A DNA stretch of 64,000 nucleotides, from positions 124,001 to 188,000 of the IMG/VR virus record IMGVR_UViG_3300009011_000001; one strand, written 5' to 3'. Of this stretch, positions 2,717 to 39,892 are shown in pieces. A model generated the notes under the pieces. It was not told the origin of the DNA. It saw nothing but the letters and a program-made list of their open reading frames with translations, and searched no databases. Both the position numbers and the translations under genes were made by a program. Numbering within the stretch: the stretch's first letter is position 1; each line of letters begins with the position of its first letter.

Positions 2717-3079
2717 ATGTCTACTCTCGATATCGTTCTGTGCTTGTCGAACATCGCAATGCTGGTTTTCATGGGCGTGGTTGCAAAGACCATGCTCAAG
2801 AAGGGCGTGGCACTCAAAGAAGTAATCATGGATCTGTGCGCCGTCTTCACCTTCACCATGGGTGAGGACCACAAGGCCACAGTTGCGTCGGTCGTGTCGG
2901 TCGTACTCGGTATGATCGTCTTCAACTACTTCTGGCCAGTTCCAGTCTACACAGGCATGTGGATTGTGTTCTGGGTAGTCGGCTGGATTCTGCAAGCCTA
3001 CGTTCGCCTTAGCACTGGCACGCCATTCGGCAACATGGGTCTGTGGGGCATCAAAGCCATCGCTTCATTCATGAAGTAA
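2717..3079 (+). CDS. multi-pass membrane protein
   Basis: AGGAGG RBS; 3-4 hydrophobic segments. Confidence 0.75.
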   Translation: MSTLDIVLCLSNIAMLVFMGVVAKTMLKKGVALKEVIMDLCAVFTFTMGEDHKATVASVVSVVLGMIVFNYFWPVPVYTGMWIVFWVVGWILQAYVRLSTGTPFGNMGLWGIKAIASFMK

Positions 3080-3086
3080 AATGTAT

Positions 3087-3128
3087 GGGGACCTTCGGGT
3101 CCCCGGTACATTCCCATCTTTTTTTTTT
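3087..3128 (+). terminator. intrinsic terminator
   Basis: GGGGACC-TTCG-GGTCCCC followed by a T-tract. Confidence 0.75.
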
Positions 3129-3142
3129 GTCGTAAGGACGCC

Positions 3143-4150
3143 ATGATGCCCAGTTCCAGTAAGAGCCAGTATAAGCTGATGCAGTTCGCTGCTATCAATA
3201 AAGAATTTGCAGAAAAGAAGGGCATCAAACAAGAGACGGCAAAAGAGTGGCATGCTGCCGATCAGGCCAAGAAGAAAGAAGATCCGACCTGGTACGACAA
3301 CCTTCCTGAGAAGTTTGAAAAGAAAAAGAAAGATCGTGGCGAATCAATGGAAGGGTTCCAGTCCTGGCTCTTCCATCTGGTTACTGGCGGTACATTCAAG
3401 GACTCCGACCCTGACCATCCCGACTACTACAAAGAAAAAGAACTCAGCGCTATCGAGAAGATGATCAAGGATGAGAAGATCCTTGACAAGATCGAAATGC
3501 GCGAAGGCAAGATCGATGTCAAGAACATCAATAGCCATTTGCTATTGCGCCACTTCAACGAGTCGAATTGGCTGAGCGAGCTGGAGAAGGGCGTCCTTCA
3601 GATCGACAACTACGCCAACAAGTTCTTCGATGCCCGCCTGCGCTACAGCGACGCTATGCGCAAGGTGTACGAGAAGTGCGAAACCATGAAGCCACAGGAT
3701 GCTTTGGACTACGCCCTTAAGGCCGTACCTCCACTGAAGATGAAGTTGGATGCCATCTCCCCTCCGACCTTCCTGCTGGCAATCAACTCCGAGAAGAAGA
3801 CTCACGGCTACAAGTTCACGGAAGCTAACCCCGGCCCAAGTCCTTTCTACATGGAAGCGCTGTCCAAGGGTCAAGTGAAGAAGCTCTTGACGCTGATGCC
3901 TCACCTGTTCCAAATGGACGGGTTTGGTAACTACGAGCTGGAACATCTGTATTGGACTCTGGACGATACTGACGAACACAAGTGGTGGGCGCATCACTAT
4001 CCTGATGATGACCACATCTGGAGCAAGATGCTGAACCTGTTCCCTTACGCTGGTGAGTTTGATGAGTACGATTACGAGACTCCTCTGAACACCATCATCA
4101 CGAAGATCCGTCGTGGCTGCGAAGAGTTGATCAACAAGTCTGTGAAGTGA
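3143..4150 (+). CDS. probable virion head protein with cleavable N-terminal segment
   Basis: GESMEG site (S-x-E); C-terminal domain resembles the C-terminus of 57096-60521 (ALSKGQV vs ALNAEQI; both end in SVK). Confidence 0.55.
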   Translation: MMPSSSKSQYKLMQFAAINKEFAEKKGIKQETAKEWHAADQAKKKEDPTWYDNLPEKFEKKKKDRGESMEGFQSWLFHLVTGGTFKDSDPDHPDYYKEKELSAIEKMIKDEKILDKIEMREGKIDVKNINSHLLLRHFNESNWLSELEKGVLQIDNYANKFFDARLRYSDAMRKVYEKCETMKPQDALDYALKAVPPLKMKLDAISPPTFLLAINSEKKTHGYKFTEANPGPSPFYMEALSKGQVKKLLTLMPHLFQMDGFGNYELEHLYWTLDDTDEHKWWAHHYPDDDHIWSKMLNLFPYAGEFDEYDYETPLNTIITKIRRGCEELINKSVK

Positions 4151-4153
4151 TAT

Positions 4154-4185
4154 CATACAGCCAGCCCGCAAGGGCTGGCTGTATG
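4154..4185 (+). terminator. CATA...TATG-closed hairpin terminator
   Basis: CATACAGCCAGCCC-GCAA-GGGCTGGCTGTATG. Confidence 0.8.
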
Positions 4186-4200
4186 CTGCTTAAGTATTTT

Positions 4201-4214
4201 GAGTAATACATTAT
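4201..4214 (+). promoter_or_regulatory. putative early promoter motif
   Basis: GAGTAATACATTAT. Confidence 0.6.
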
Positions 4215-4258
4215 TCGCTTGAACGTCTCGTTCCCAACTAAACAAGGATTTGATTTAA

Positions 4259-4666
4259 ATGCGTCCACTTAAACAAGCTATCTACTCTTCCCGTACTGCA
4301 GACAAGTTCGTTATCCGTCTGCCGGATGGCATGCGTGAACGTATCGCCGAAGTTGCCCGTACCCATCACCGTAGCATGAACTCTGAAATCATCGCTCGGT
4401 TGGAACAAAGCCTTATTCAGGAGGAGAAAGAAAAGAACCCAGCAATGATCGTCGGTCCAGGCGATGATGTCCTGATGCCTGCTGTTGATGCGTGGGTCCC
4501 TGTAGCCGGCATGCTCGTCTGCGAGCGTCTGGATACGTCGAAAGTTTACGGCATTAAAGATTTCGATGTGGATAAAGATGGTAAGCTGTATGCCGTCCTC
4601 GGTTCCCTTAAAGGAGAAGAAGCCAAGATGCTGATTGGGCATCTGCAACCGTTCGTTGTAACTTAA
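4259..4666 (+). CDS. amrZ: AmrZ-like Arc/ribbon-helix-helix regulator with a non-AmrZ C-terminal domain
   Basis: First ~55 aa ([52 protein letters not shown]) are nearly identical to the Pseudomonas AmrZ/AlgZ N-terminus as I recall it. Confidence 0.9.
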
Positions 4667-4729: not shown

Positions 4730-5377
4730 ATGCACAAAGGCTTGTTTGTCTCCCTAGAAGGGGGTGAAGGAACAGGTAAGACAACGCAGCGCGAGAAGGT
4801 AGCCGATCACTTCTCAGCGCTGGGTTTGAACGTTGTCAGAACCCGAGAGCCAGGCGGCACCCCTCTGGCTGAAAGGTTCCGCGACATCCTCCTGTCGGAA
4901 CATGACGAAGAGATGAGCGCCAAATGCGAAACGTTGTTGTTCTATGCTGCTCGCGAACAGCATCTGGCGCAAGTAATTCGTCCGCACCTCAACGAGGGCG
5001 CTTTGGTCATCTGCGATCGTTTTGCAGATACCACCGAAGCCTACCAGATGGCTGGCGGTAAAATGGATCCAGATTTCATCAGCGGTCTGCGCAAGCACAT
5101 CGTCGGTGAAACTGAACCTGATCTCGTCATCGTCCTTGTGATGGATGTCGAGAAAGCTTTCCTGCGCGCAGCCGCACGCGGTACGCTCAATCGCATGGAA
5201 GGTAAAGGTCTGGACTACTACAAGGCTGCCCAAGAGCACTTTGTGAAGCTAGCCCACCAGCCTAACTCCCCCTCCTCTTACGCGATCATCAGTGCCGACC
5301 AACCTATCGAGGCGATCTCTGAGCAGATCATCCAAGAAGTGCAGTTGGCGTGGGATCGTAAACACGGCAAGTTCTAA
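4730..5377 (+). CDS. tmk: thymidylate (dTMP) kinase
   Basis: EGGEGTGKTT P-loop, REPGGT, LFYAAR, CDRF motifs. Confidence 0.95.
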   Translation: MHKGLFVSLEGGEGTGKTTQREKVADHFSALGLNVVRTREPGGTPLAERFRDILLSEHDEEMSAKCETLLFYAAREQHLAQVIRPHLNEGALVICDRFADTTEAYQMAGGKMDPDFISGLRKHIVGETEPDLVIVLVMDVEKAFLRAAARGTLNRMEGKGLDYYKAAQEHFVKLAHQPNSPSSYAIISADQPIEAISEQIIQEVQLAWDRKHGKF

Positions 5378-6162: not shown

Positions 6163-6408
6163 ATGGAGCAGACTAAGTTTGTCTCGCTGGTCGAATCTGC
6201 TACAAACATGTTTATCAGTTACACTACGGCGATATTGGCTCAGGTCATTATCTTCCCATTCTACGACGTTCACGTTCAGCTGCATGAGAACATGTCGATG
6301 GCTTTGATCTTCGCCATCATCGGTTTCTTCCGCAACTACGGCGTTCGTCGCCTGTTCAACGCAGCACCATGGGTTAAGTTCAAAGGGGCAAAGAATGCGC
6401 AAAATTGA
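6163..6408 (+). CDS. small membrane protein
   Basis: AAGGA RBS; two hydrophobic helices; QTK..SLVE..N...RNYGVRRLFN pattern common in phages. Confidence 0.7.
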   Translation: MEQTKFVSLVESATNMFISYTTAILAQVIIFPFYDVHVQLHENMSMALIFAIIGFFRNYGVRRLFNAAPWVKFKGAKNAQN

Positions 6409-8353
6409 TTCGCAGTACAAAGATCTGTATCGCTTCATTCTTCAGCAAGGTCTGGCCAAGGCTAGCCGCACCGATATCGGCACTACGTCGGCGCTGGGCG
6501 GCTGGATGCGTTTCGATTTGCGTGACGATATCCTCCCGATCACGTCTCTGCGTCTGGTGCGCGAAGAGAAGTTCATCGGGGAGCAACTCTGGTTCGTCTC
6601 CGGCGATCCTTCGATCAAGTTCCTGAAGGACAACAACATCAGCATCTGGGATAGCTGGTTCATCCCAGGAACTGCCGTCTACGAAGACGAACAGCAATGG
6701 CGCCCAATTGTTGATGTGTTGCGGGAAGTATTCCGTTTGAAAATGGGCACTCAAATTTCAAACGATATCGTTTGCCACAAGCTGGCTACCGATACAGGCA
6801 TCTTTGCATTCCACGATCTCTTGTTCTGCATGGGGCTGGAAGATGGAGCTGATCACGTTAATCAGATCCATACCGAAAATGAATGCAACGGCTTCTCGAA
6901 AGAACAGATCGATGCCATTCGTACTCGTGCGACGGCGCTGGGCGTTGATGTGTCCTACTTGCCGAAGAAACCAATCGGCATTATCCAGCGTATTGCGCTG
7001 GCTAACGAAATGGGTCTGGGCGAAGAACTGTTCGAGTATTGCGACGGTCCAATGCCTCGTGAAGAAAAGGACACGATGTACGCGGAAGTAAACGTACAGT
7101 TGTGTCCAGAATTCACCGGCCCGTGGGATCTGTACCAATCCGAACTCGACCACATCGCCGAGTGGCTGACTTCGAAGAACGTTCCTACCGAAGTTCCTGC
7201 GCCACTAAAACCTGTCAGCCTGCAGACTCGTCTGAACCGGATCGACAAGAGCCAGTTCGGTCAGTGGAGCGCGATCAACCAGATCGTCTTCCCGCCTGTA
7301 GAAATGACGGCTGAACCAGCTCCTGAAGTCCGCACCAAAAAAGATGTCTTCGGCGAAGACGTTGTGGTGACGGCAGCGGCTGTGGAGGAAGAACCTCAGC
7401 CGAAACACACGCAGATCGAGATCTACTTCGAAGGTCGTTTCCAGAAAGTCGACATCAGCAAAGAACAGGCTGACGACATCTGGGAAATGATGGACATCAT
7501 GAAGATCCCGGCCTACCGTCTGGTCGACGCCAACATCGGCAAGGGTGGCTACGGCCCTCAGTGGCGTAACTGGCAGGACACTCAGATCGTTGACGGTTCT
7601 GAAGTTGAGCTGTACAAGTCCAAAGGTTACGAGTATGTCACTGAAGTAGACGACCTTGACTTCGGTCATCGTTTCTACGGAAAGGTGGTCATGCACCGCG
7701 ACATCGATCAGTTGGCAAATATGATCGATCTGCTGAAGACCGATCCGGACAACCGCCGCATCATCGTGTCTGCATGGAACCCGGGTCGTACTTGGCAGGC
7801 GGCTCTGCCTCCTTGCCACCTGTACTACCAGTGCGTGACCTACGAGAAAGATCTGCGTGACTACGAGGAAGACTTCGCGAAGCGCGATCTGACCGACAAG
7901 TATCTCGTCGGCCTGACTTCGATTCACGAAGGTGGCGAGCTCGATCCGGAAGATCCTGAAATCGAGAAGAAGTTCTTCGCTGCTGCGAAAGCCTTCGCTA
8001 TCGAGAATGGCATTCCGACTCGTTGGATCAGCATGGGTGTGGTACTGCGCAGCTGGGATACTCCGGCTGGTGGTGTGTTCAACACTCCGCAATACGCGGT
8101 GCTGTTGCGCATGATTGCTCATGTAACCAACATGGATGCTCGTGAACTGTTCATCGTTGGTATCGATGCGCATATTTACGACAACCAAATGGAAGCCATC
8201 GACGAGGTCATTTATACCGACTCTCCAGATGACTGCCCGCGTCTGTTCATCAAACGCGATGTTCAATCGATCGACGACTTCAACATCAGCGACTTCGAGC
8301 TGGTTGGTTATAACCCCGTGCCTAACACGAAGGTCATGCCGATCGCTCGCTAA
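6395..8353 (+). CDS. thyA: thymidylate synthase with large insertions
   Basis: RT.IGT, E.LWF, IWDSW, YGPQWRNW, RRIIVSAWNP, LPPCH, RS.D...FN, DAHIY. Confidence 0.95.
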   Translation: MRKIDSQYKDLYRFILQQGLAKASRTDIGTTSALGGWMRFDLRDDILPITSLRLVREEKFIGEQLWFVSGDPSIKFLKDNNISIWDSWFIPGTAVYEDEQQWRPIVDVLREVFRLKMGTQISNDIVCHKLATDTGIFAFHDLLFCMGLEDGADHVNQIHTENECNGFSKEQIDAIRTRATALGVDVSYLPKKPIGIIQRIALANEMGLGEELFEYCDGPMPREEKDTMYAEVNVQLCPEFTGPWDLYQSELDHIAEWLTSKNVPTEVPAPLKPVSLQTRLNRIDKSQFGQWSAINQIVFPPVEMTAEPAPEVRTKKDVFGEDVVVTAAAVEEEPQPKHTQIEIYFEGRFQKVDISKEQADDIWEMMDIMKIPAYRLVDANIGKGGYGPQWRNWQDTQIVDGSEVELYKSKGYEYVTEVDDLDFGHRFYGKVVMHRDIDQLANMIDLLKTDPDNRRIIVSAWNPGRTWQAALPPCHLYYQCVTYEKDLRDYEEDFAKRDLTDKYLVGLTSIHEGGELDPEDPEIEKKFFAAAKAFAIENGIPTRWISMGVVLRSWDTPAGGVFNTPQYAVLLRMIAHVTNMDARELFIVGIDAHIYDNQMEAIDEVIYTDSPDDCPRLFIKRDVQSIDDFNISDFELVGYNPVPNTKVMPIAR

Positions 8354-10117: not shown

Positions 10118-10564
10118 ATGCCCTGCTACGACGGAACACCAGTGCCAAGCGAATTGGAAAAGCGCATTAACAAGGCCGCCGCTTTGTTGCAGCTTACCTA
10201 CACCCTTTTCGACGAGCCTGTGTCAGAACACATTTCCAAAGCTGCCGGTAACCCGTACTGCAATGATCGCAGCATCGAGCCGCTGTTGTGCGAGCGCATG
10301 CACGATCTGCAAAACAACCGACCGCACGATTACAAAAATCTGTTCGCACCCGATTACCGTGAAGACAAGATCGACGGCTACACCAACGTCCTCCGTAGTC
10401 AGCTTCATTCGTGGTGGAGAACGCATCTGCGTCTCGACGAAGAGCGCAATGGAAAACCGAGCGATGTAGACCTGCTCCATTCGGCGATGCTCAAACTCAC
10501 CGCAGAAGAAGCAGGTGCCTTAGAACTTCTCCAGTATTGGAAGAAGGTACACGACGAGAAATAG
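10118..10564 (+). CDS. hypothetical phage protein (MPCYDG N-terminus)
   Basis: ORF in operon. Confidence 0.7.
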   Translation: MPCYDGTPVPSELEKRINKAAALLQLTYTLFDEPVSEHISKAAGNPYCNDRSIEPLLCERMHDLQNNRPHDYKNLFAPDYREDKIDGYTNVLRSQLHSWWRTHLRLDEERNGKPSDVDLLHSAMLKLTAEEAGALELLQYWKKVHDEK

Positions 10565-37400: not shown

Positions 37401-38438
37401 TCCAAGTGGTCGACCAAACAATGGATCGAACATTTGGGTGGTCGGCAGGACGAACAGATGAACATCGTGTTCGGCAGCCCGTATGCGGTGGCCAAGCTTC
37501 TGGAACTGTACTGCGAAGAAATGGTTCGCGGTACCATCATTAAAACTATACCGAAAGAAGAATAGGGGGTTGTCATGGAACTTACGTTTTATTGCGAACC
37601 GGACAGTAATGAATGGCGTGTTCTCGAACCGGGTAAAGAGTTCGCTACTTTCCGCGCCAAGTTCACCGATAACTACGCCGGCAATGGGATTCGCGTCCAA
37701 ACGTCTATCGGCGGTGACGGCGCCGGCGCCAAAATGTGGGGCGAGCTCAAGGTCCTTGTTTATGGCAACGGTCAAATAAACGGTCAGCGCGATGTGGCAA
37801 AAATCGTTTGCTCAGAAAATCGGTCGTTTGAAATGCCTTTGTCGCATTTCTATATCGACGATGAATACCTACTCGGAAACGGCCTGTTGTCTGATTCTGT
37901 TTCCTTTGCTCTTCCGGCCTCTAACGCCAAAGGCCTAGGAAATATTTCATCTGTCTTTTTCAAATATTGGCAGATCAAGATTCTTGGCCCACTTATTGAA
38001 AGCGATAAGAGGTCGGCGGCTTACGCATCGGGGCTGATTTTTAGAAAACGTAATGGGGACGATTTCTTCTTGGCCTGTAACCGACTTCGCGAGCCAGCGC
38101 AGGTCAAATGGGTGAGCGAGATCCCAGAACCGATATTCAGCAATGAATACGGCGATGTCTACGTCTACGACGATATATCGCGTCAAGACAAACTGACCAT
38201 CTCTACGGACGATTTCTTTAAAGCGTCTGTTCAGTAAGGGGCGTGTATGAAAGTTCCAATTGGTCCTGACATGGAGGAGGCGCTTCTCAACACGGTGAAG
38301 GTAAAACTTCAGCAGTTGAAGTGTGTTGCTCCAGGTGGTATCTACGGCAGTTGGCTGAATTCGTTGGTTGCAGATGTCAACAAAGCCTTCGATAAAATTG
38401 CCGATAAAGCGGCCAGCGATAACGCCGGTTGTCTCTAG
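34474..38438 (+). CDS. run of ~11 hypothetical CDSs, including membrane protein 36458-36922
   Basis: Tightly coupled + strand ORFs (34474, 35012, 35181, 35669, 35937, 36215, 36458, 36924, 37575, 38247). Confidence 0.7.
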
Positions 38439-38579
38439 ATGGTAAAAAGTTACAATGCGTATTAGCTATATGTAGGAAGAGCACTGCCCGGCGGGCAGCA
38501 AGGCTATTCTACACGACGCAACCCGCCGGTGATGCCGGTGCCTTTGAGCGAAATGGCGCTCTGGCGGGTTGCGTCACCT

Positions 38580-38667
<88 letters not shown>

Positions 38668-38751: not shown

Positions 38752-38828
38752 TGGGGTATAGCTCAGTCCGGTAGAGCAGCGGGTTTTGATCCCGCTTGTC
38801 ATAGGTTCGAATCCTGTTGCCCCTGCCA
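38752..38828 (+). tRNA. tRNA-Gln(TTG)
   Basis: GCGGG-TTTTGAT-CCCGC anticodon arm, TTCGAAT, GCCA end. Confidence 0.9.
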
Positions 38829-38833
38829 TGTTC

Positions 38834-38975
38834 GGAGAAGCGTTCGGTTACGGAGTGGTTGAACGTTGATATATCGGGTAACTACCGATTGGATACATGA
38901 GCTAGAGTGGAAGTCGCCTGCCATGGGGCCATGACTATTCATCCGCGAGTTCGAATCTCGCCTGTCCGCTTCTCC
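38834..38975 (+). ncRNA. tRNA-like RNA with expanded central domain and no CCA
   Basis: GGAGAAGCG/CGCTTCTCC closing stem; D-like ACG-GAGTGGTTGAA-CGT; T arm GCGAG-TTCGAAT-CTCGC. Confidence 0.65.
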
Positions 38976-38987
38976 TTACCTTGTAAT

Positions 38988-39063
38988 TCCGCGATAGCTC
39001 AGTTGGTAGAGCAAACGGCTGTTAACCGTTTGGTCCCTGGTTCGAGTCCAGGTCGTGGAGCCA
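38988..39063 (+). tRNA. tRNA-Asn(GTT)
   Basis: AACGG-CTGTTAA-CCGTT; canonical cloverleaf; GCCA. Confidence 0.95.
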
Positions 39064-39194: not shown

Positions 39195-39284
39195 GGTGAA
39201 TTGGTCGAGTGGCCTATGGCGGCGGCTTGCTAAGCCGTTGACCCTTAACCGGGTCCGAGAGTTCGAATCTCTCATTCACCTCCA
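39195..39284 (+). tRNA. tRNA-Ser(GCT)
   Basis: GCGGC-TTGCTAA-GCCGT; long variable arm; CCA. Confidence 0.92.
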
Positions 39285-39291
39285 GTTAGTC

Positions 39292-39378
39292 CCCTGGGTA
39301 GCTCAGTCGGTTAGAGCAGCTCTCTGAGGTCGCTCCTCAGGAAGAAGGTCGTGGGTTCAAGTCCCGCCCTCGGGGCCA
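39292..39378 (+). ncRNA. aberrant tRNA-like RNA with an extended anticodon arm
   Basis: Canonical D arm, T arm and GCCA, but the anticodon arm is TCT-CTGAGG-TCGCT-CCTCAG-GA-AGA with no valid 7-nt loop. Confidence 0.75.
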
Positions 39379-39867: not shown

Positions 39868-39892
39868 GGCCTGCTTCGGCAGGCCTTTATGC
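39868..39892 (+). terminator. terminator of the tRNA operon
   Basis: GGCCTGC-TTCG-GCAGGCC-TTTATGC. Confidence 0.75.

What the first reader, a model, noticed from the sequence alone, without database searches (positions are those of the whole stretch)
38834..38975. 142-nt tRNA mimic with the anticodon arm replaced by a ~75-nt domain
Seen: a D-loop-like GAGTGGTTGAA and a perfect T arm are kept. The acceptor region is extended by GGAGAAGCG/CGCTTCTCC with internal mismatches and no CCA. The centre holds ATCGG-GTAACTA-CCGAT and AGTC/GACT stems. Inference: a non-aminoacylated RNA presenting a tRNA elbow, such as a decoy for tRNA-targeting nucleases or an adaptor.
Basis: partly seen in the sequence, partly recalled or inferred. 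Interest (0 to 1): 0.6.

Follow-up and report, generated by a model that had tools for sequence, protein, structure and literature searches.

The report
Anticodon-less tRNA-shaped RNA in jumbo phage
A giant phage carries, in the middle of its tRNA genes, a 142-base gene for an RNA that keeps the core shape of a serine tRNA but has no usable anticodon or amino-acid end; two distantly related phages have the same design, so it is probably a working tRNA look-alike whose job is still unknown.

Summary
Window 38834-38975 (+) lies between tRNA-Gln and tRNA-Asn in the tRNA cluster of a 248-kb phiKZ-like jumbo phage. It has a class-II (tRNA-Ser type) D arm, a perfect T arm, a 14-position terminal helix (7-bp acceptor-like stem with a UU/UC internal loop plus 7 extra pairs) and no CCA. 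ARAGORN and Rfam do not call it a tRNA.

The centre is better read as two hairpins than as one 75-nt domain: a 5-bp stem with a 7-nt loop, and a roughly 52-nt hairpin at the variable-arm position.

I found two relatives with the same frame:
- Burkholderia phage FLC9, where it is mis-annotated as a protein.
- An uncultivated phage contig, E5.

E5 and FLC9 keep 51 base pairs with 10 compensatory changes. Their "anticodon" arm is a closed hairpin of about 10 bp. The extended terminal helix covaries across all three.

None of 121 ordinary phage tRNA genes has more than 2 extra terminal pairs.

The window copy is absent from the phage's closest relatives, and its central fold has no comparative support.

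Best reading: a tRNA-Ser-derived, non-decoding, stable tRNA mimic. A decoy role is plausible but untested. The closest known analogue is T4 RNA C, itself of unknown function. I class it as a new variant of a known kind, of moderate interest.

The parts
38834..38847 (+). 5' strand of the terminal helix: a 7-nt extension GGAGAAG, then the acceptor-like strand CGUUCGG (UU lies in a 2x2 internal loop)
   Evidence: Sequence. Pairs with 38962-38975 at 12 of 14 positions. The helix covaries across the window, E5 and FLC9.
38848..38849 (+). Linker UU at tRNA positions 8-9 (U8 kept)
   Evidence: Sequence and frame comparison.
38850..38866 (+). D arm of class II (tRNA-Ser) type: 3-bp stem ACG/CGU and 11-nt loop GAGUGGUUGAA, with A14, G15, G18, G19 and A21
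   Evidence: E5 and FLC9 have the stem GCU/GGC with the same loop pattern. Aligned by the covariance model R1.
38873..38889 (+). Hairpin AUCGG-GUAACUA-CCGAU at the anticodon-arm position. It is separated from the D arm by 6 nt instead of 1, and the loop has G32 and U37, which are atypical for an anticodon loop.
   Evidence: Present in every near-optimal fold. No comparative support.
38890..38941 (+). Long irregular hairpin at the variable-arm position (prediction only)
   Evidence: Fold constrained to the tRNA frame: -47.0 kcal/mol against an unconstrained -48.8. The analogous hairpin in E5 and FLC9, about 70 nt with a 13-bp base, is supported by covariation.
38944..38944 (+). C at the position of C48, the partner of G15 in the tRNA core
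   Evidence: C in the window, E5 and FLC9.
38945..38961 (+). T arm GCGAG-UUCGAAU-CUCGC
   Evidence: The stem covaries with FLC9 (GUAGG/CCUAC). The same T arm occurs in ordinary phage tRNA-Ser genes.
38962..38975 (+). 3' strand of the terminal helix: CUGUCCG, then the extension CUUCUCC. It is followed by UUACC, not CCA.
38752..38828 (+). Upstream neighbour tRNA-Gln(UUG) with encoded CCA, 5 nt before the element
38988..39063 (+). Downstream neighbour tRNA-Asn(GUU) with encoded CCA, 12 nt after the element

Best explanation
The element is a gene for a non-decoding tRNA look-alike derived from a phage tRNA-Ser gene. It belongs to a small family found so far in three phiKZ-like jumbo phages.

Shown:
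- It sits like a tRNA gene inside the tRNA cluster.
- It keeps the D arm, T arm and core nucleotides that build the tRNA L-shape and elbow.
- Its acceptor end is buried in a helix lengthened by 5-10 pairs, with a UU/UC internal loop in the window copy and in FLC9.
- It has no CCA.
- In the two relatives the anticodon arm is a closed hairpin of about 10 bp with a 4-5-nt loop, so there is no anticodon.
- The variable arm is enlarged to about 50-70 nt.
- These helices are maintained by compensatory changes.

Inferred:
- The RNA is made as part of the polycistronic tRNA transcript.
- It is set free by the processing of its tRNA neighbours (RNase P at the next tRNA, 3' trimming of the previous one).
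- The long terminal helix protects it from exonucleases, so it accumulates as a stable RNA of about 140-170 nt.
- Because it can neither decode nor, most likely, be charged, it would act through its shape. It would occupy a protein that recognises the tRNA body.
- The likeliest such partner is a host tRNA-targeting defence nuclease, which would find no anticodon loop to cut. Seryl-tRNA synthetase or a tRNA-processing enzyme are alternatives.

Its patchy presence in a hypervariable accessory locus fits a host-specific counter-defence or fitness role rather than a core function.
For: Position and anatomy.

Not a tRNA by ARAGORN or Rfam.

Relatives:
- E5 is L005:9945-10101(-), between tRNA-Glu and tRNA-Asp.
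- FLC9 is L015:2985-3152, between tRNA-Asp and tRNA-Gln.

Structure of E5 and FLC9:
- 51 pairs, 98% of cells paired, 10 pairs changed on both sides, 0 of 500 shuffles as good, and 31-47% paired when the partners are slid.
- RNAalifold recovers essentially the same helices independently; only the D-arm pairing register differs.

All three together: the terminal helix plus T arm are 93% paired, with 10 pairs changed on both sides.

Link between the window copy and FLC9: the same UU/UC loop sits in the same context, CGUUC(G/A)G with CUGUCCG.

Covariance model built from E5 and FLC9: the window scores 44.3 bits, E=1.9e-8, the best hit outside the training set.

Control: 0 of 121 ordinary tRNA genes have more than 2 extra terminal pairs, and 109 of 121 encode CCA.

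Conservation: the RNA is 78.6% identical between E5 and FLC9, while a flanking protein is only 32.7% identical.

Common clade: the window's helicase finds FLC9 as its best GenBank match at 42.5%, and the window encodes phiKZ internal head proteins.

Accessory character: the locus is hypervariable among close relatives.
Against: - There are no expression, end-mapping or binding data. The function is pure inference.
- Only three family members were found, despite eight viral-contig scans (seven aimed at the element), one metagenome scan and two genome scans.
- The central domain of the window copy cannot be aligned with that of E5 and FLC9, and has no covariation support.
- The window copy's folding energy is unremarkable (z=-1.68).
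- Ordinary tRNA-Ser genes score 30-38 bits with the same model. The 44-bit hit therefore largely reflects the tRNA-Ser frame plus the extension.
- The element, together with tRNA-Asn, is absent from a relative whose dCTP-deaminase-like protein is 86% identical. It is therefore dispensable in that lineage and could be a recent, neutral acquisition.
Confidence: 0.45

Rival explanations
1. It is a decaying tRNA-Ser pseudogene. A duplicated tRNA-Ser gene picked up insertions in the anticodon and variable arms and lost its CCA. It is carried along in a fast-changing locus with no function.
For: - It is absent from the closest relatives (L100; L093).
- The locus is hypervariable.
- The central domain is not conserved between the window and E5/FLC9.
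- The folding z-score is only -1.68.
Against: - All core and elbow nucleotides are intact.
- A 7-bp perfectly paired extension beyond the acceptor stem is not seen in any of 121 ordinary tRNA genes, and decay would not produce it.
- The extension differs in sequence but stays paired in all three phages.
- E5 and FLC9 keep 51 pairs with 10 compensatory changes, while a neighbouring protein has drifted to 33% identity.
Confidence: 0.2
2. It is a chargeable but non-decoding carrier. RNase P cuts at the canonical site inside the long helix, the trailer is trimmed and the host enzyme adds CCA. Seryl-tRNA synthetase ignores the anticodon and reads the long variable arm and the D arm, so it would load serine. 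The product would then serve a non-ribosomal reaction, or would simply sequester the synthetase.
For: - tRNA-Ser recognition features outside the acceptor end are kept: C11:G24 in all three, G20b in the window and FLC9, and a long variable arm one nucleotide before the T stem. That these are identity elements is established tRNA-Ser knowledge, not tested here.
Against: - The discriminator position is C or U, not the G73 used by bacterial seryl-tRNA synthetases.
- The acceptor stem carries two mismatches in the window and FLC9.
- The leader is fully paired with the trailer, which disfavours RNase P.
- All neighbouring tRNAs encode CCA while these elements do not.
Confidence: 0.1
3. It is a processing or stability element for the polycistronic tRNA transcript. 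A tRNA-shaped module would recruit RNase P or RNase Z, or would block exonucleases, to tune the maturation of the neighbouring tRNAs. It would have no role of its own as a free RNA.
For: - It is embedded with 5-21-nt spacers between tRNAs in all three phages.
- Other long-stemmed hairpins occur in the same clusters, at window 38518-38572 and L015:2737-2886.
Against: - The neighbouring tRNAs are themselves complete RNase P/Z substrates.
- Relatives lacking the element have the same tRNA-Gln and tRNA-Ser.
- Conservation of the elbow nucleotides and of a 70-nt variable hairpin is more than a punctuation mark needs.
Confidence: 0.1
4. It is a Y-RNA-like partner of a Ro60/Rsr protein. The long terminal helix with an internal loop would bind Rsr, and the tRNA-like part would tether another factor, as in bacterial YrlA.
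For: - The terminal helix is formed by both ends and has an internal loop.
- Some jumbo phages encode ROT/TROVE proteins with a tRNA-like partner (PMC7824862).
Against: - The Rfam YrlA model gives only 20 bits against a threshold of 69. That match joins this T arm to the D arm of the next tRNA.
- YrlA has the permuted order: T arm, closed acceptor hairpin, D arm. Here the order is that of a normal tRNA.
- None of the 20 largest ORFs of the window screened against Pfam hits a TROVE domain. The other 184 kb of the genome were not examined.
Confidence: 0.05
5. It is a real tRNA interrupted by one or two introns, which are removed to give a normal serine or other tRNA.
For:
- FLC9 has another tRNA gene with a 39-nt insertion next to a UUA anticodon.
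Against: - The E5 call needs a non-canonical 32/33 insertion site and an anticodon stem with two mismatches.
- It is not reproduced in FLC9 or in the window.
- It contradicts the helices that covary.
- No Rfam intron or ribozyme family matches.
- From general knowledge, 50-100 nt is too short for a group I intron.
Confidence: 0.03

Closest known systems
Phage T4 RNA C (species 1 RNA, rnaC)
   Same: - Encoded inside a phage tRNA cluster and about the same size (139 nt).
- Has a perfect T arm next to a 7-bp acceptor-like stem that carries two U-U mismatches, and a long structured centre.
- Its function is still unknown: it is described as an RNA of yet unknown function, expressed late and seen on Northern blots (PMC9697503).
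   Different: - No detectable homology beyond the T arm. The model R1 gives 15.9 bits, E=0.08.
- T4 RNA C has no tRNA-Ser-type D arm and no helix extension beyond the 7-bp stem.
- Its host and phage family are different (Straboviridae, against phiKZ-like).
Canonical class II tRNA-Ser
   Same: - D arm with a 3-bp stem and the loop GAGYGGNUKAA.
- C11:G24, the G15-C48 pair, a T arm identical to those of phage tRNA-Ser genes, and a variable arm one nucleotide before the T stem.
- It is the evident evolutionary source.
   Different: - No CCA and no G73.
- The acceptor stem is mismatched and continued by 5-10 extra pairs.
- The anticodon arm is displaced or closed.
- The variable arm is 3-5 times longer.
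- Not called by ARAGORN or by the Rfam tRNA model.
Bacterial Y RNA YrlA (RF02553)
   Same: A non-coding RNA that combines a long helix formed by its two ends with a tRNA-like D/T elbow module.
   Different: - Permuted module order.
- The Rfam score is far below threshold.
- No Rsr gene seen in the window.
allo-tRNAs and tRNA-Sec (8/4, 9/3, 8/5 acceptor/T configurations; PMC5389517)
   Same: tRNA-Ser-like bodies with a longer acceptor stem and a long variable arm. According to that paper's abstract, some occur in phages.
   Different: - Those keep a total of 12-13 bp in the acceptor plus T branch, a real anticodon loop and a free acceptor end.
- Here the branch is 17-22 bp, the T stem is the normal 5 bp and there is no anticodon.
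- No Rfam tRNA-Sec match.

Membership tests
Canonical tRNA (Rfam RF00005 / ARAGORN) | Recognised as a cloverleaf by ARAGORN or by the Rfam tRNA model at the gathering score | tested here: not met
   No call over 38834-38975, while the four or five neighbours score 39-69 bits.
Canonical tRNA (Rfam RF00005 / ARAGORN) | 5-bp anticodon stem with a 7-nt loop, one nucleotide after the D arm | tested here: not met
   The window hairpin lies 6 nt after the D arm and has G32 and U37. E5 and FLC9 have a closed hairpin of about 10 bp with a 4-5-nt loop.
Canonical tRNA (Rfam RF00005 / ARAGORN) | Free 7-bp acceptor stem with a discriminator and a CCA end (encoded in this cluster) | tested here: not met
   Two mismatches, 7 extra pairs and no CCA. 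The control of 121 tRNA genes gives at most 2 extra pairs, and 109 of 121 encode CCA.
Canonical tRNA (Rfam RF00005 / ARAGORN) | D-loop and T-loop nucleotides that form the elbow and core (U8, A14, G15-C48, G18, G19, UUCRA) | tested here: met
   All are present in the window, E5 and FLC9.
Intron-containing tRNA | Removing one insert gives a canonical tRNA, consistently among homologues | tested here: not met
   ARAGORN -i gives nothing for the window or FLC9, and a weak, non-canonical model for E5 only.
Extended tRNA-Ser-like family defined here (E5, FLC9) | Terminal helix extended at least 5 bp beyond a 7-position acceptor-like stem that abuts a 5-bp T arm, with no CCA | tested here: met
   Window 14 positions, E5 12, FLC9 17. 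Covariation in the extension.
Extended tRNA-Ser-like family defined here (E5, FLC9) | Class II D arm at standard spacing, and C48 before the T arm | tested here: met
   The R1 alignment has high posterior probability over these parts.
Extended tRNA-Ser-like family defined here (E5, FLC9) | Closed 8+2-bp hairpin and a 13-bp-based, roughly 70-nt hairpin with the apical CUGGC-UUGCU-GCYAG | tested here: not met
   The window centre is 77 nt against 96-97 nt and cannot be aligned. It has a 7-nt-loop hairpin and a different long hairpin. The architecture is analogous, but homology of the centre is unproven.
Extended tRNA-Ser-like family defined here (E5, FLC9) | Significant hit by a covariance model built without the window sequence | tested here: met
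   44.3 bits, E=1.9e-8. True tRNA-Ser genes reach 30-38 bits, so the margin is modest.
T4 RNA C-like stable RNAs | Sequence or structure homology to T4 rnaC | tested here: inconclusive
   R1 on T4 rnaC gives 15.9 bits, E=0.08. Only the T arm and the mismatched 7-bp stem resemble each other.
T4 RNA C-like stable RNAs | Accumulates as a discrete stable RNA during infection | not testable with these tools
   No transcript data are available for this phage, E5 or FLC9.
YrlA / Y RNA (RF02553) | Rfam model at the gathering score, the order T arm - closed acceptor hairpin - D arm, and a linked rsr gene | tested here: not met
   20.2 bits against 69, and the match spans two genes. The order is that of a normal tRNA. 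None of the 20 largest window ORFs screened hits a TROVE domain.
tmRNA | tRNA-Ala-like ends with G3:U70 and a tag reading frame | tested here: not met
   ARAGORN finds no tmRNA. Position 3 is A paired with U. There is no Rfam tmRNA hit.

The most novel reading that the evidence does not exclude
Jumbo phages carry a repertoire of anticodon-less tRNA look-alikes. This would include this extended tRNA-Ser type, the CCA-ended hairpin type at 39292-39378, and others in FLC9, L093 and L100. They would act as uncleavable decoys that soak up host tRNA-targeting defence nucleases, or would hijack a tRNA-binding host factor such as seryl-tRNA synthetase. That would be an RNA-based counter-defence class, and it might also explain T4 RNA C after fifty years.
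Probability: 0.2. Interest if true: 0.8.

Novelty: new variant of a known kind. Interest (0 to 1): 0.55.

Why it matters
Phage tRNA clusters are usually read as codon-usage aids or as spare parts against tRNA-cleaving defences. Here a cluster also encodes RNAs that keep the tRNA shape while systematically removing the two ends that make a tRNA work. That design is held in place by compensatory evolution across phages whose proteins have diverged to 30-40% identity.

This points to a shape-dependent function such as a decoy, a sponge or a cofactor. One family member lies in a cultured phage, FLC9 on Burkholderia glumae, so the question can be tested directly. It may also shed light on the unexplained T4 RNAs C and D.

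On the practical side, such genes are currently missed by tRNA finders or annotated as small proteins. FLC9 gp119 is an example.

Tried and rejected
**Searches for more members**
- Pattern scans of viral contigs gave only E5 plus chance hits:
  - D loop to T arm: one search gave 0. The element's own contig is missed because the stored piece starts inside the element (see L004).
  - The same pattern loosened: one search gave E5 plus two chance hits, and one search gave E5 only.
  - The 14-mer of the E5/FLC9 variable arm: one search gave 75 loci, of which only E5 is real.
  - The UU-loop pattern: one search gave 0.
- The metagenome scan gave the same phage again (L010, identical element) plus chance hits.
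- The genome scans gave 0 and one chance hit inside a protease gene of a Parcubacteria MAG.
- blastn of the window element against GenBank phages found nothing at E<0.01, and only T-arm matches at E<10. One unannotated hit, in S-B43, is an ordinary tRNA-Ser.
- Neighbouring proteins are orphans.

**Relatives of this phage, reached through the dCTP-deaminase-like gene**
- L100 has Tyr, Gln and Ser but lacks the element and tRNA-Asn.
- L093 and L095 have other sets.
- L096-L099 have no tRNAs at this locus, and L101 does not reach it.

**Other phiKZ-like phages**
- Noxifer has no member: the covariance model and the structural descriptor both find none (locus).
- LucasX has no member by the structural descriptor; the covariance model was not run on it.

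**Other elements considered**
- A 138-nt "type 2" tRNA-like in L093 and L100 looked related, but it does not share the frame spacing. I do not count it as a member.

**Readings rejected**
- Spliced tRNA.
- YrlA, tmRNA, tRNA-Sec, or a ribozyme or intron family.
- An alternative internal roughly 85-nt tRNA-like fold suggested by Rfam and by low-threshold ARAGORN. It is sub-threshold and not conserved in E5.

**Literature**
- Searches found no description of such elements.

Full report
**Context**

The window is part of IMGVR_UViG_3300009011_000001, a 248,574-bp contig. A near-identical 248,578-bp contig, with an identical element, is in a JGI metagenome.

The window encodes phiKZ-type internal head proteins, a helicase, thymidylate synthase, a glutathionylspermidine-synthase-like protein and a dCTP-deaminase-like protein. 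Its helicase finds Burkholderia phage FLC9 as its best GenBank match, at 42.5% identity, followed by many phiKZ-like jumbo phages. This is therefore a jumbo phage of that group.

On the + strand it carries these tRNA genes:
- tRNA-Tyr at 38580-38667
- tRNA-Gln at 38752-38828
- tRNA-Asn at 38988-39063
- tRNA-Ser(GCU) at 39195-39284
- an Rfam-only tRNA-like at 39292-39375

The finding fills the gap between Gln and Asn, with a 5-nt spacer before it and a 12-nt spacer after it.

**Checking the observation**

Reading the 142 nt as a tRNA frame gives:
- Positions 1-7, GGAGAAG, pair perfectly with positions 136-142, CUUCUCC.
- Positions 8-14, CGUUCGG, face positions 129-135, CUGUCCG. They form C-G, G-C, a 2x2 internal loop (UU/UC), then C-G, G-U, G-C.
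- This 7-position acceptor-like stem abuts the T arm GCGAG-UUCGAAU-CUCGC.
- After the 5' strand come UU (U8 kept), a 3-bp D stem ACG/CGU, and the 11-nt loop GAGUGGUUGAA. That arm is the class II, tRNA-Ser-type D arm, with A14, G15, G18, G19 and A21.
- A C stands just before the T stem, where C48 pairs with G15.

The 3' end continues as UUACC. All four ARAGORN-called neighbours encode CCA.

ARAGORN and Rfam do not call the element a tRNA. The one weak YrlA match joins this T arm to the D arm of the next tRNA and is spurious.

As a control I took 121 ordinary tRNA genes from all the phage loci fetched. None has more than 2 base pairs of leader-trailer pairing beyond the acceptor stem, and 109 of them encode CCA. 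The 7-bp extension and the missing CCA are therefore real peculiarities.

The overall folding energy is not unusual (z=-1.68).

**The centre**

With the tRNA frame imposed, the best fold costs only 1.8 kcal/mol more than the free optimum. It contains two hairpins:
- AUCGG-GUAACUA-CCGAU at 38873-38889.
- Directly after it, a long irregular hairpin at 38890-38941. Three nucleotides separate it from the T arm.

The small hairpin sits 6 nt after the D arm instead of 1. Its loop has G at position 32 and U at position 37. It is not a credible anticodon arm.

So the centre is not one 75-nt domain. It is a hairpin at the anticodon position plus a greatly enlarged variable arm.

**Relatives**

A scan for the T arm plus the start of the 3' strand found the same 23 nt in two kinds of place. 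One is an ordinary phage tRNA-Ser(GCU) (L006). The other is a 157-nt element in another viral contig, E5 (L005:9945-10101 on the minus strand), between tRNA-Glu and tRNA-Asp.

blastn with E5 then found a 168-nt element in the cultured jumbo phage Burkholderia phage FLC9 (L015:2985-3152), between tRNA-Asp and tRNA-Gln. It is 78.6% identical to E5 and is annotated there as hypothetical protein gp119.

Both relatives have the same frame:
- A terminal helix of 12 positions (E5) or 17 positions (FLC9).
- UG at positions 8-9.
- The D stem GCU/GGC with the loop GAGYGGNUKAA.
- C48, a 5-bp T arm, and no CCA although their neighbours encode CCA.

FLC9 has the same UU/UC internal loop as the window, in the same context: CGUUCAG with CUGUCCG, against CGUUCGG with CUGUCCG. 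FLC9 thus shares its acceptor motif with the window copy and its central domain with E5. That links the three.

**Structure of E5 and FLC9**

My hand-drawn structure on their alignment has 51 pairs:
- 98% of cells are paired.
- 10 pairs changed on both sides.
- None of 500 shuffles does as well.
- Only 31-47% of cells pair when the partners are slid.

RNAalifold recovers essentially the same helices on its own, differing only in the register of the D arm.

The anticodon position is occupied by an 8+2-bp hairpin with a 4-5-nt loop, UU(U)GC. There is no anticodon. The variable-arm position holds a hairpin of about 70 nt with a 13-bp base and a conserved apical stem-loop, CUGGC-UUGCU-GCYAG.

Across all three elements, the terminal helix and T arm are 93% paired, with 10 pairs changed on both sides. 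The extension differs in sequence in each phage but is always paired.

A covariance model built only from E5 and FLC9 finds the window element at 44.3 bits, E=1.9e-8. That is the best hit outside the training set. However, true tRNA-Ser genes reach 30-38 bits, and the model cannot align the window's centre. The shared frame is well supported. Homology of the centres is not.

A structural descriptor run over all the fetched loci returned only these three elements, plus one false positive without a real T loop.

**Evolutionary setting**

A 289-aa protein next to the E5 cluster has FLC9 as its only GenBank phage match. The identity is 32.7%, and the FLC9 gene lies next to that phage's tRNA cluster. 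The RNA is therefore far better conserved than the flanking protein.

The window phage's own close relatives, reached through the dCTP-deaminase-like gene, give a different picture. They keep the flanking genes but have different contents at the tRNA locus:
- L100 (86% identity) has Tyr, Gln and Ser(GCU), but neither the element nor tRNA-Asn.
- L093 (87%) has only Ser(GCU) and two tRNA-like genes.
- L095 has an HNH gene at this site.
- More distant relatives have no tRNAs there.

So the window copy is an accessory, cassette-like gene in a hypervariable locus.

**What it is not**

- **A spliced tRNA.** ARAGORN with introns allowed finds nothing in the window or FLC9. For E5 it gives only a weak model, with a non-canonical insertion site and a mismatched stem, which contradicts the covarying helices.
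- **YrlA, tmRNA, tRNA-Sec or any Rfam ribozyme or intron**.
- **An allo-tRNA.** The acceptor plus T branch is 17-22 bp, not 12-13.

**How it most likely works**

Shown: it has the position of a tRNA gene, an intact L-shape core, no anticodon and no CCA, a sealed and lengthened acceptor limb, and selection on these helices.

Inferred:
- It is transcribed with the cluster.
- It is released when RNase P cuts at the next tRNA and the previous tRNA's 3' end is trimmed.
- The long terminal helix protects it from exonucleases.
- It then acts by shape, as a ligand for a protein that recognises the tRNA body.

Because it offers no anticodon loop to cut and no end to charge, a role as a decoy for a tRNA-targeting defence nuclease is attractive. 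That role would also fit its patchy distribution. Binding of seryl-tRNA synthetase or of a processing enzyme is an alternative.

I put about 0.8 on [quoted passage not shown]. I put about 0.3 on the decoy mechanism specifically.

The main rival is a neutral pseudogene. The absence from close relatives and the unsupported centre favour it. The extension helix, the intact core and the covariation count against it.

**Comparison with what is known**

The closest analogue is T4 RNA C (species 1). It is 139 nt, lies in the tRNA cluster, and has a T arm next to a 7-bp stem with two U-U mismatches. A 2022 study still describes it as an RNA of unknown function (PMC9697503). Homology is not demonstrable (15.9 bits, E=0.08).

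The element works like a tRNA mimic. It is not a member of any curated family. I class it as a new variant of a known kind, namely the phage tRNA-like stable RNAs.

**Limits**

- There are only three members.
- There are no transcript data.
- The window copy's centre rests on energy prediction alone.
- The pattern-based searches could only find members that share short exact motifs.

Noticed in passing
window 39292-39378 (+): A second tRNA-like gene, called only by Rfam (38.7 bits). It has normal D and T arms, G73 and an encoded CCA. The anticodon arm is replaced by a hairpin of about 10 bp with a 5-nt loop, UCGCU, so there is no anticodon. Its homologue in L093 (4405-4490) keeps the long hairpin through several compensatory changes.
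   Followed up: partly
window 38518-38572 (+); L100:628-682: Just upstream of tRNA-Tyr lies a hairpin with a 12-bp stem (GCAACCCGCCGG...CUGGCGGGUUGC). It is conserved in relative L100 with one compensatory pair change (A-U to G-C). It may be a structured leader of the tRNA transcript. A sigma-70-like promoter match lies at 38429-38456, and a strong terminator-like hairpin at 39868-39885.
   Followed up: partly
L093:4489-4626; L100:1161-1298 and L100:1022-1160; L095:4600-4745: Close relatives of the window phage carry other 135-140-nt tRNA-like genes at the same locus. The 'type 2' form has a D-loop motif GAGUGGUGGAA, a T arm, a U-rich internal loop in its terminal stem and no CCA. Another form ends in CCA. 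Neither shares the frame spacing of the element studied.
   Followed up: partly
L095:3754-4960: In one relative an HNH-endonuclease-like gene (4000-4605) sits inside the tRNA locus. It lies directly after a fragment that looks like the 5' half of a tRNA (TCCATGGTAGCTCAGTTGGTAGAGC...). This could be a homing-endonuclease insertion or an intron in a tRNA gene.
   Followed up: no
L015:2155-2890 (Burkholderia phage FLC9, LC667451.1): The FLC9 cluster holds further odd RNAs.
- A 113-nt tRNA (2359-2471, Rfam 42 bits) has the anticodon loop AU-UUA-AG, like an ochre suppressor, followed by a 39-nt insertion.
- Two tRNA-like units (about 2183-2330) are joined so that a T arm, a UUCG-closed acceptor hairpin and a D arm follow each other, as in Y-RNA-like modules.
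- A 150-nt spacer (2737-2886) has a 13-bp terminal stem.
- The small ORF gp119 annotated over 3013-3186 overlaps the RNA element and tRNA-Gln and is probably spurious.
   Followed up: partly
L005:9528-9838 and 10213-10353: The E5 contig has tRNA-like genes that ARAGORN reads with 4-base anticodons (ttga, cgaa). It also has weak YrlA-like matches and a truncated Rfam tRNA match.
   Followed up: no
L091:4548-4759 and 4876-4975 (Pseudomonas phage Noxifer): There is a 212-nt unannotated G+C-rich spacer between tRNA-Asp and tRNA-Asn. Downstream is an unannotated tRNA-like sequence whose anticodon stem encloses a 23-nt loop.
   Followed up: no
window 6395-8353 (+): A 652-aa ORF matches thymidylate synthase in three separate stretches, the best at residues 545-647. 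The enzyme may be fused to, or interrupted by, extra sequence such as an intein or an inserted domain.
   Followed up: no
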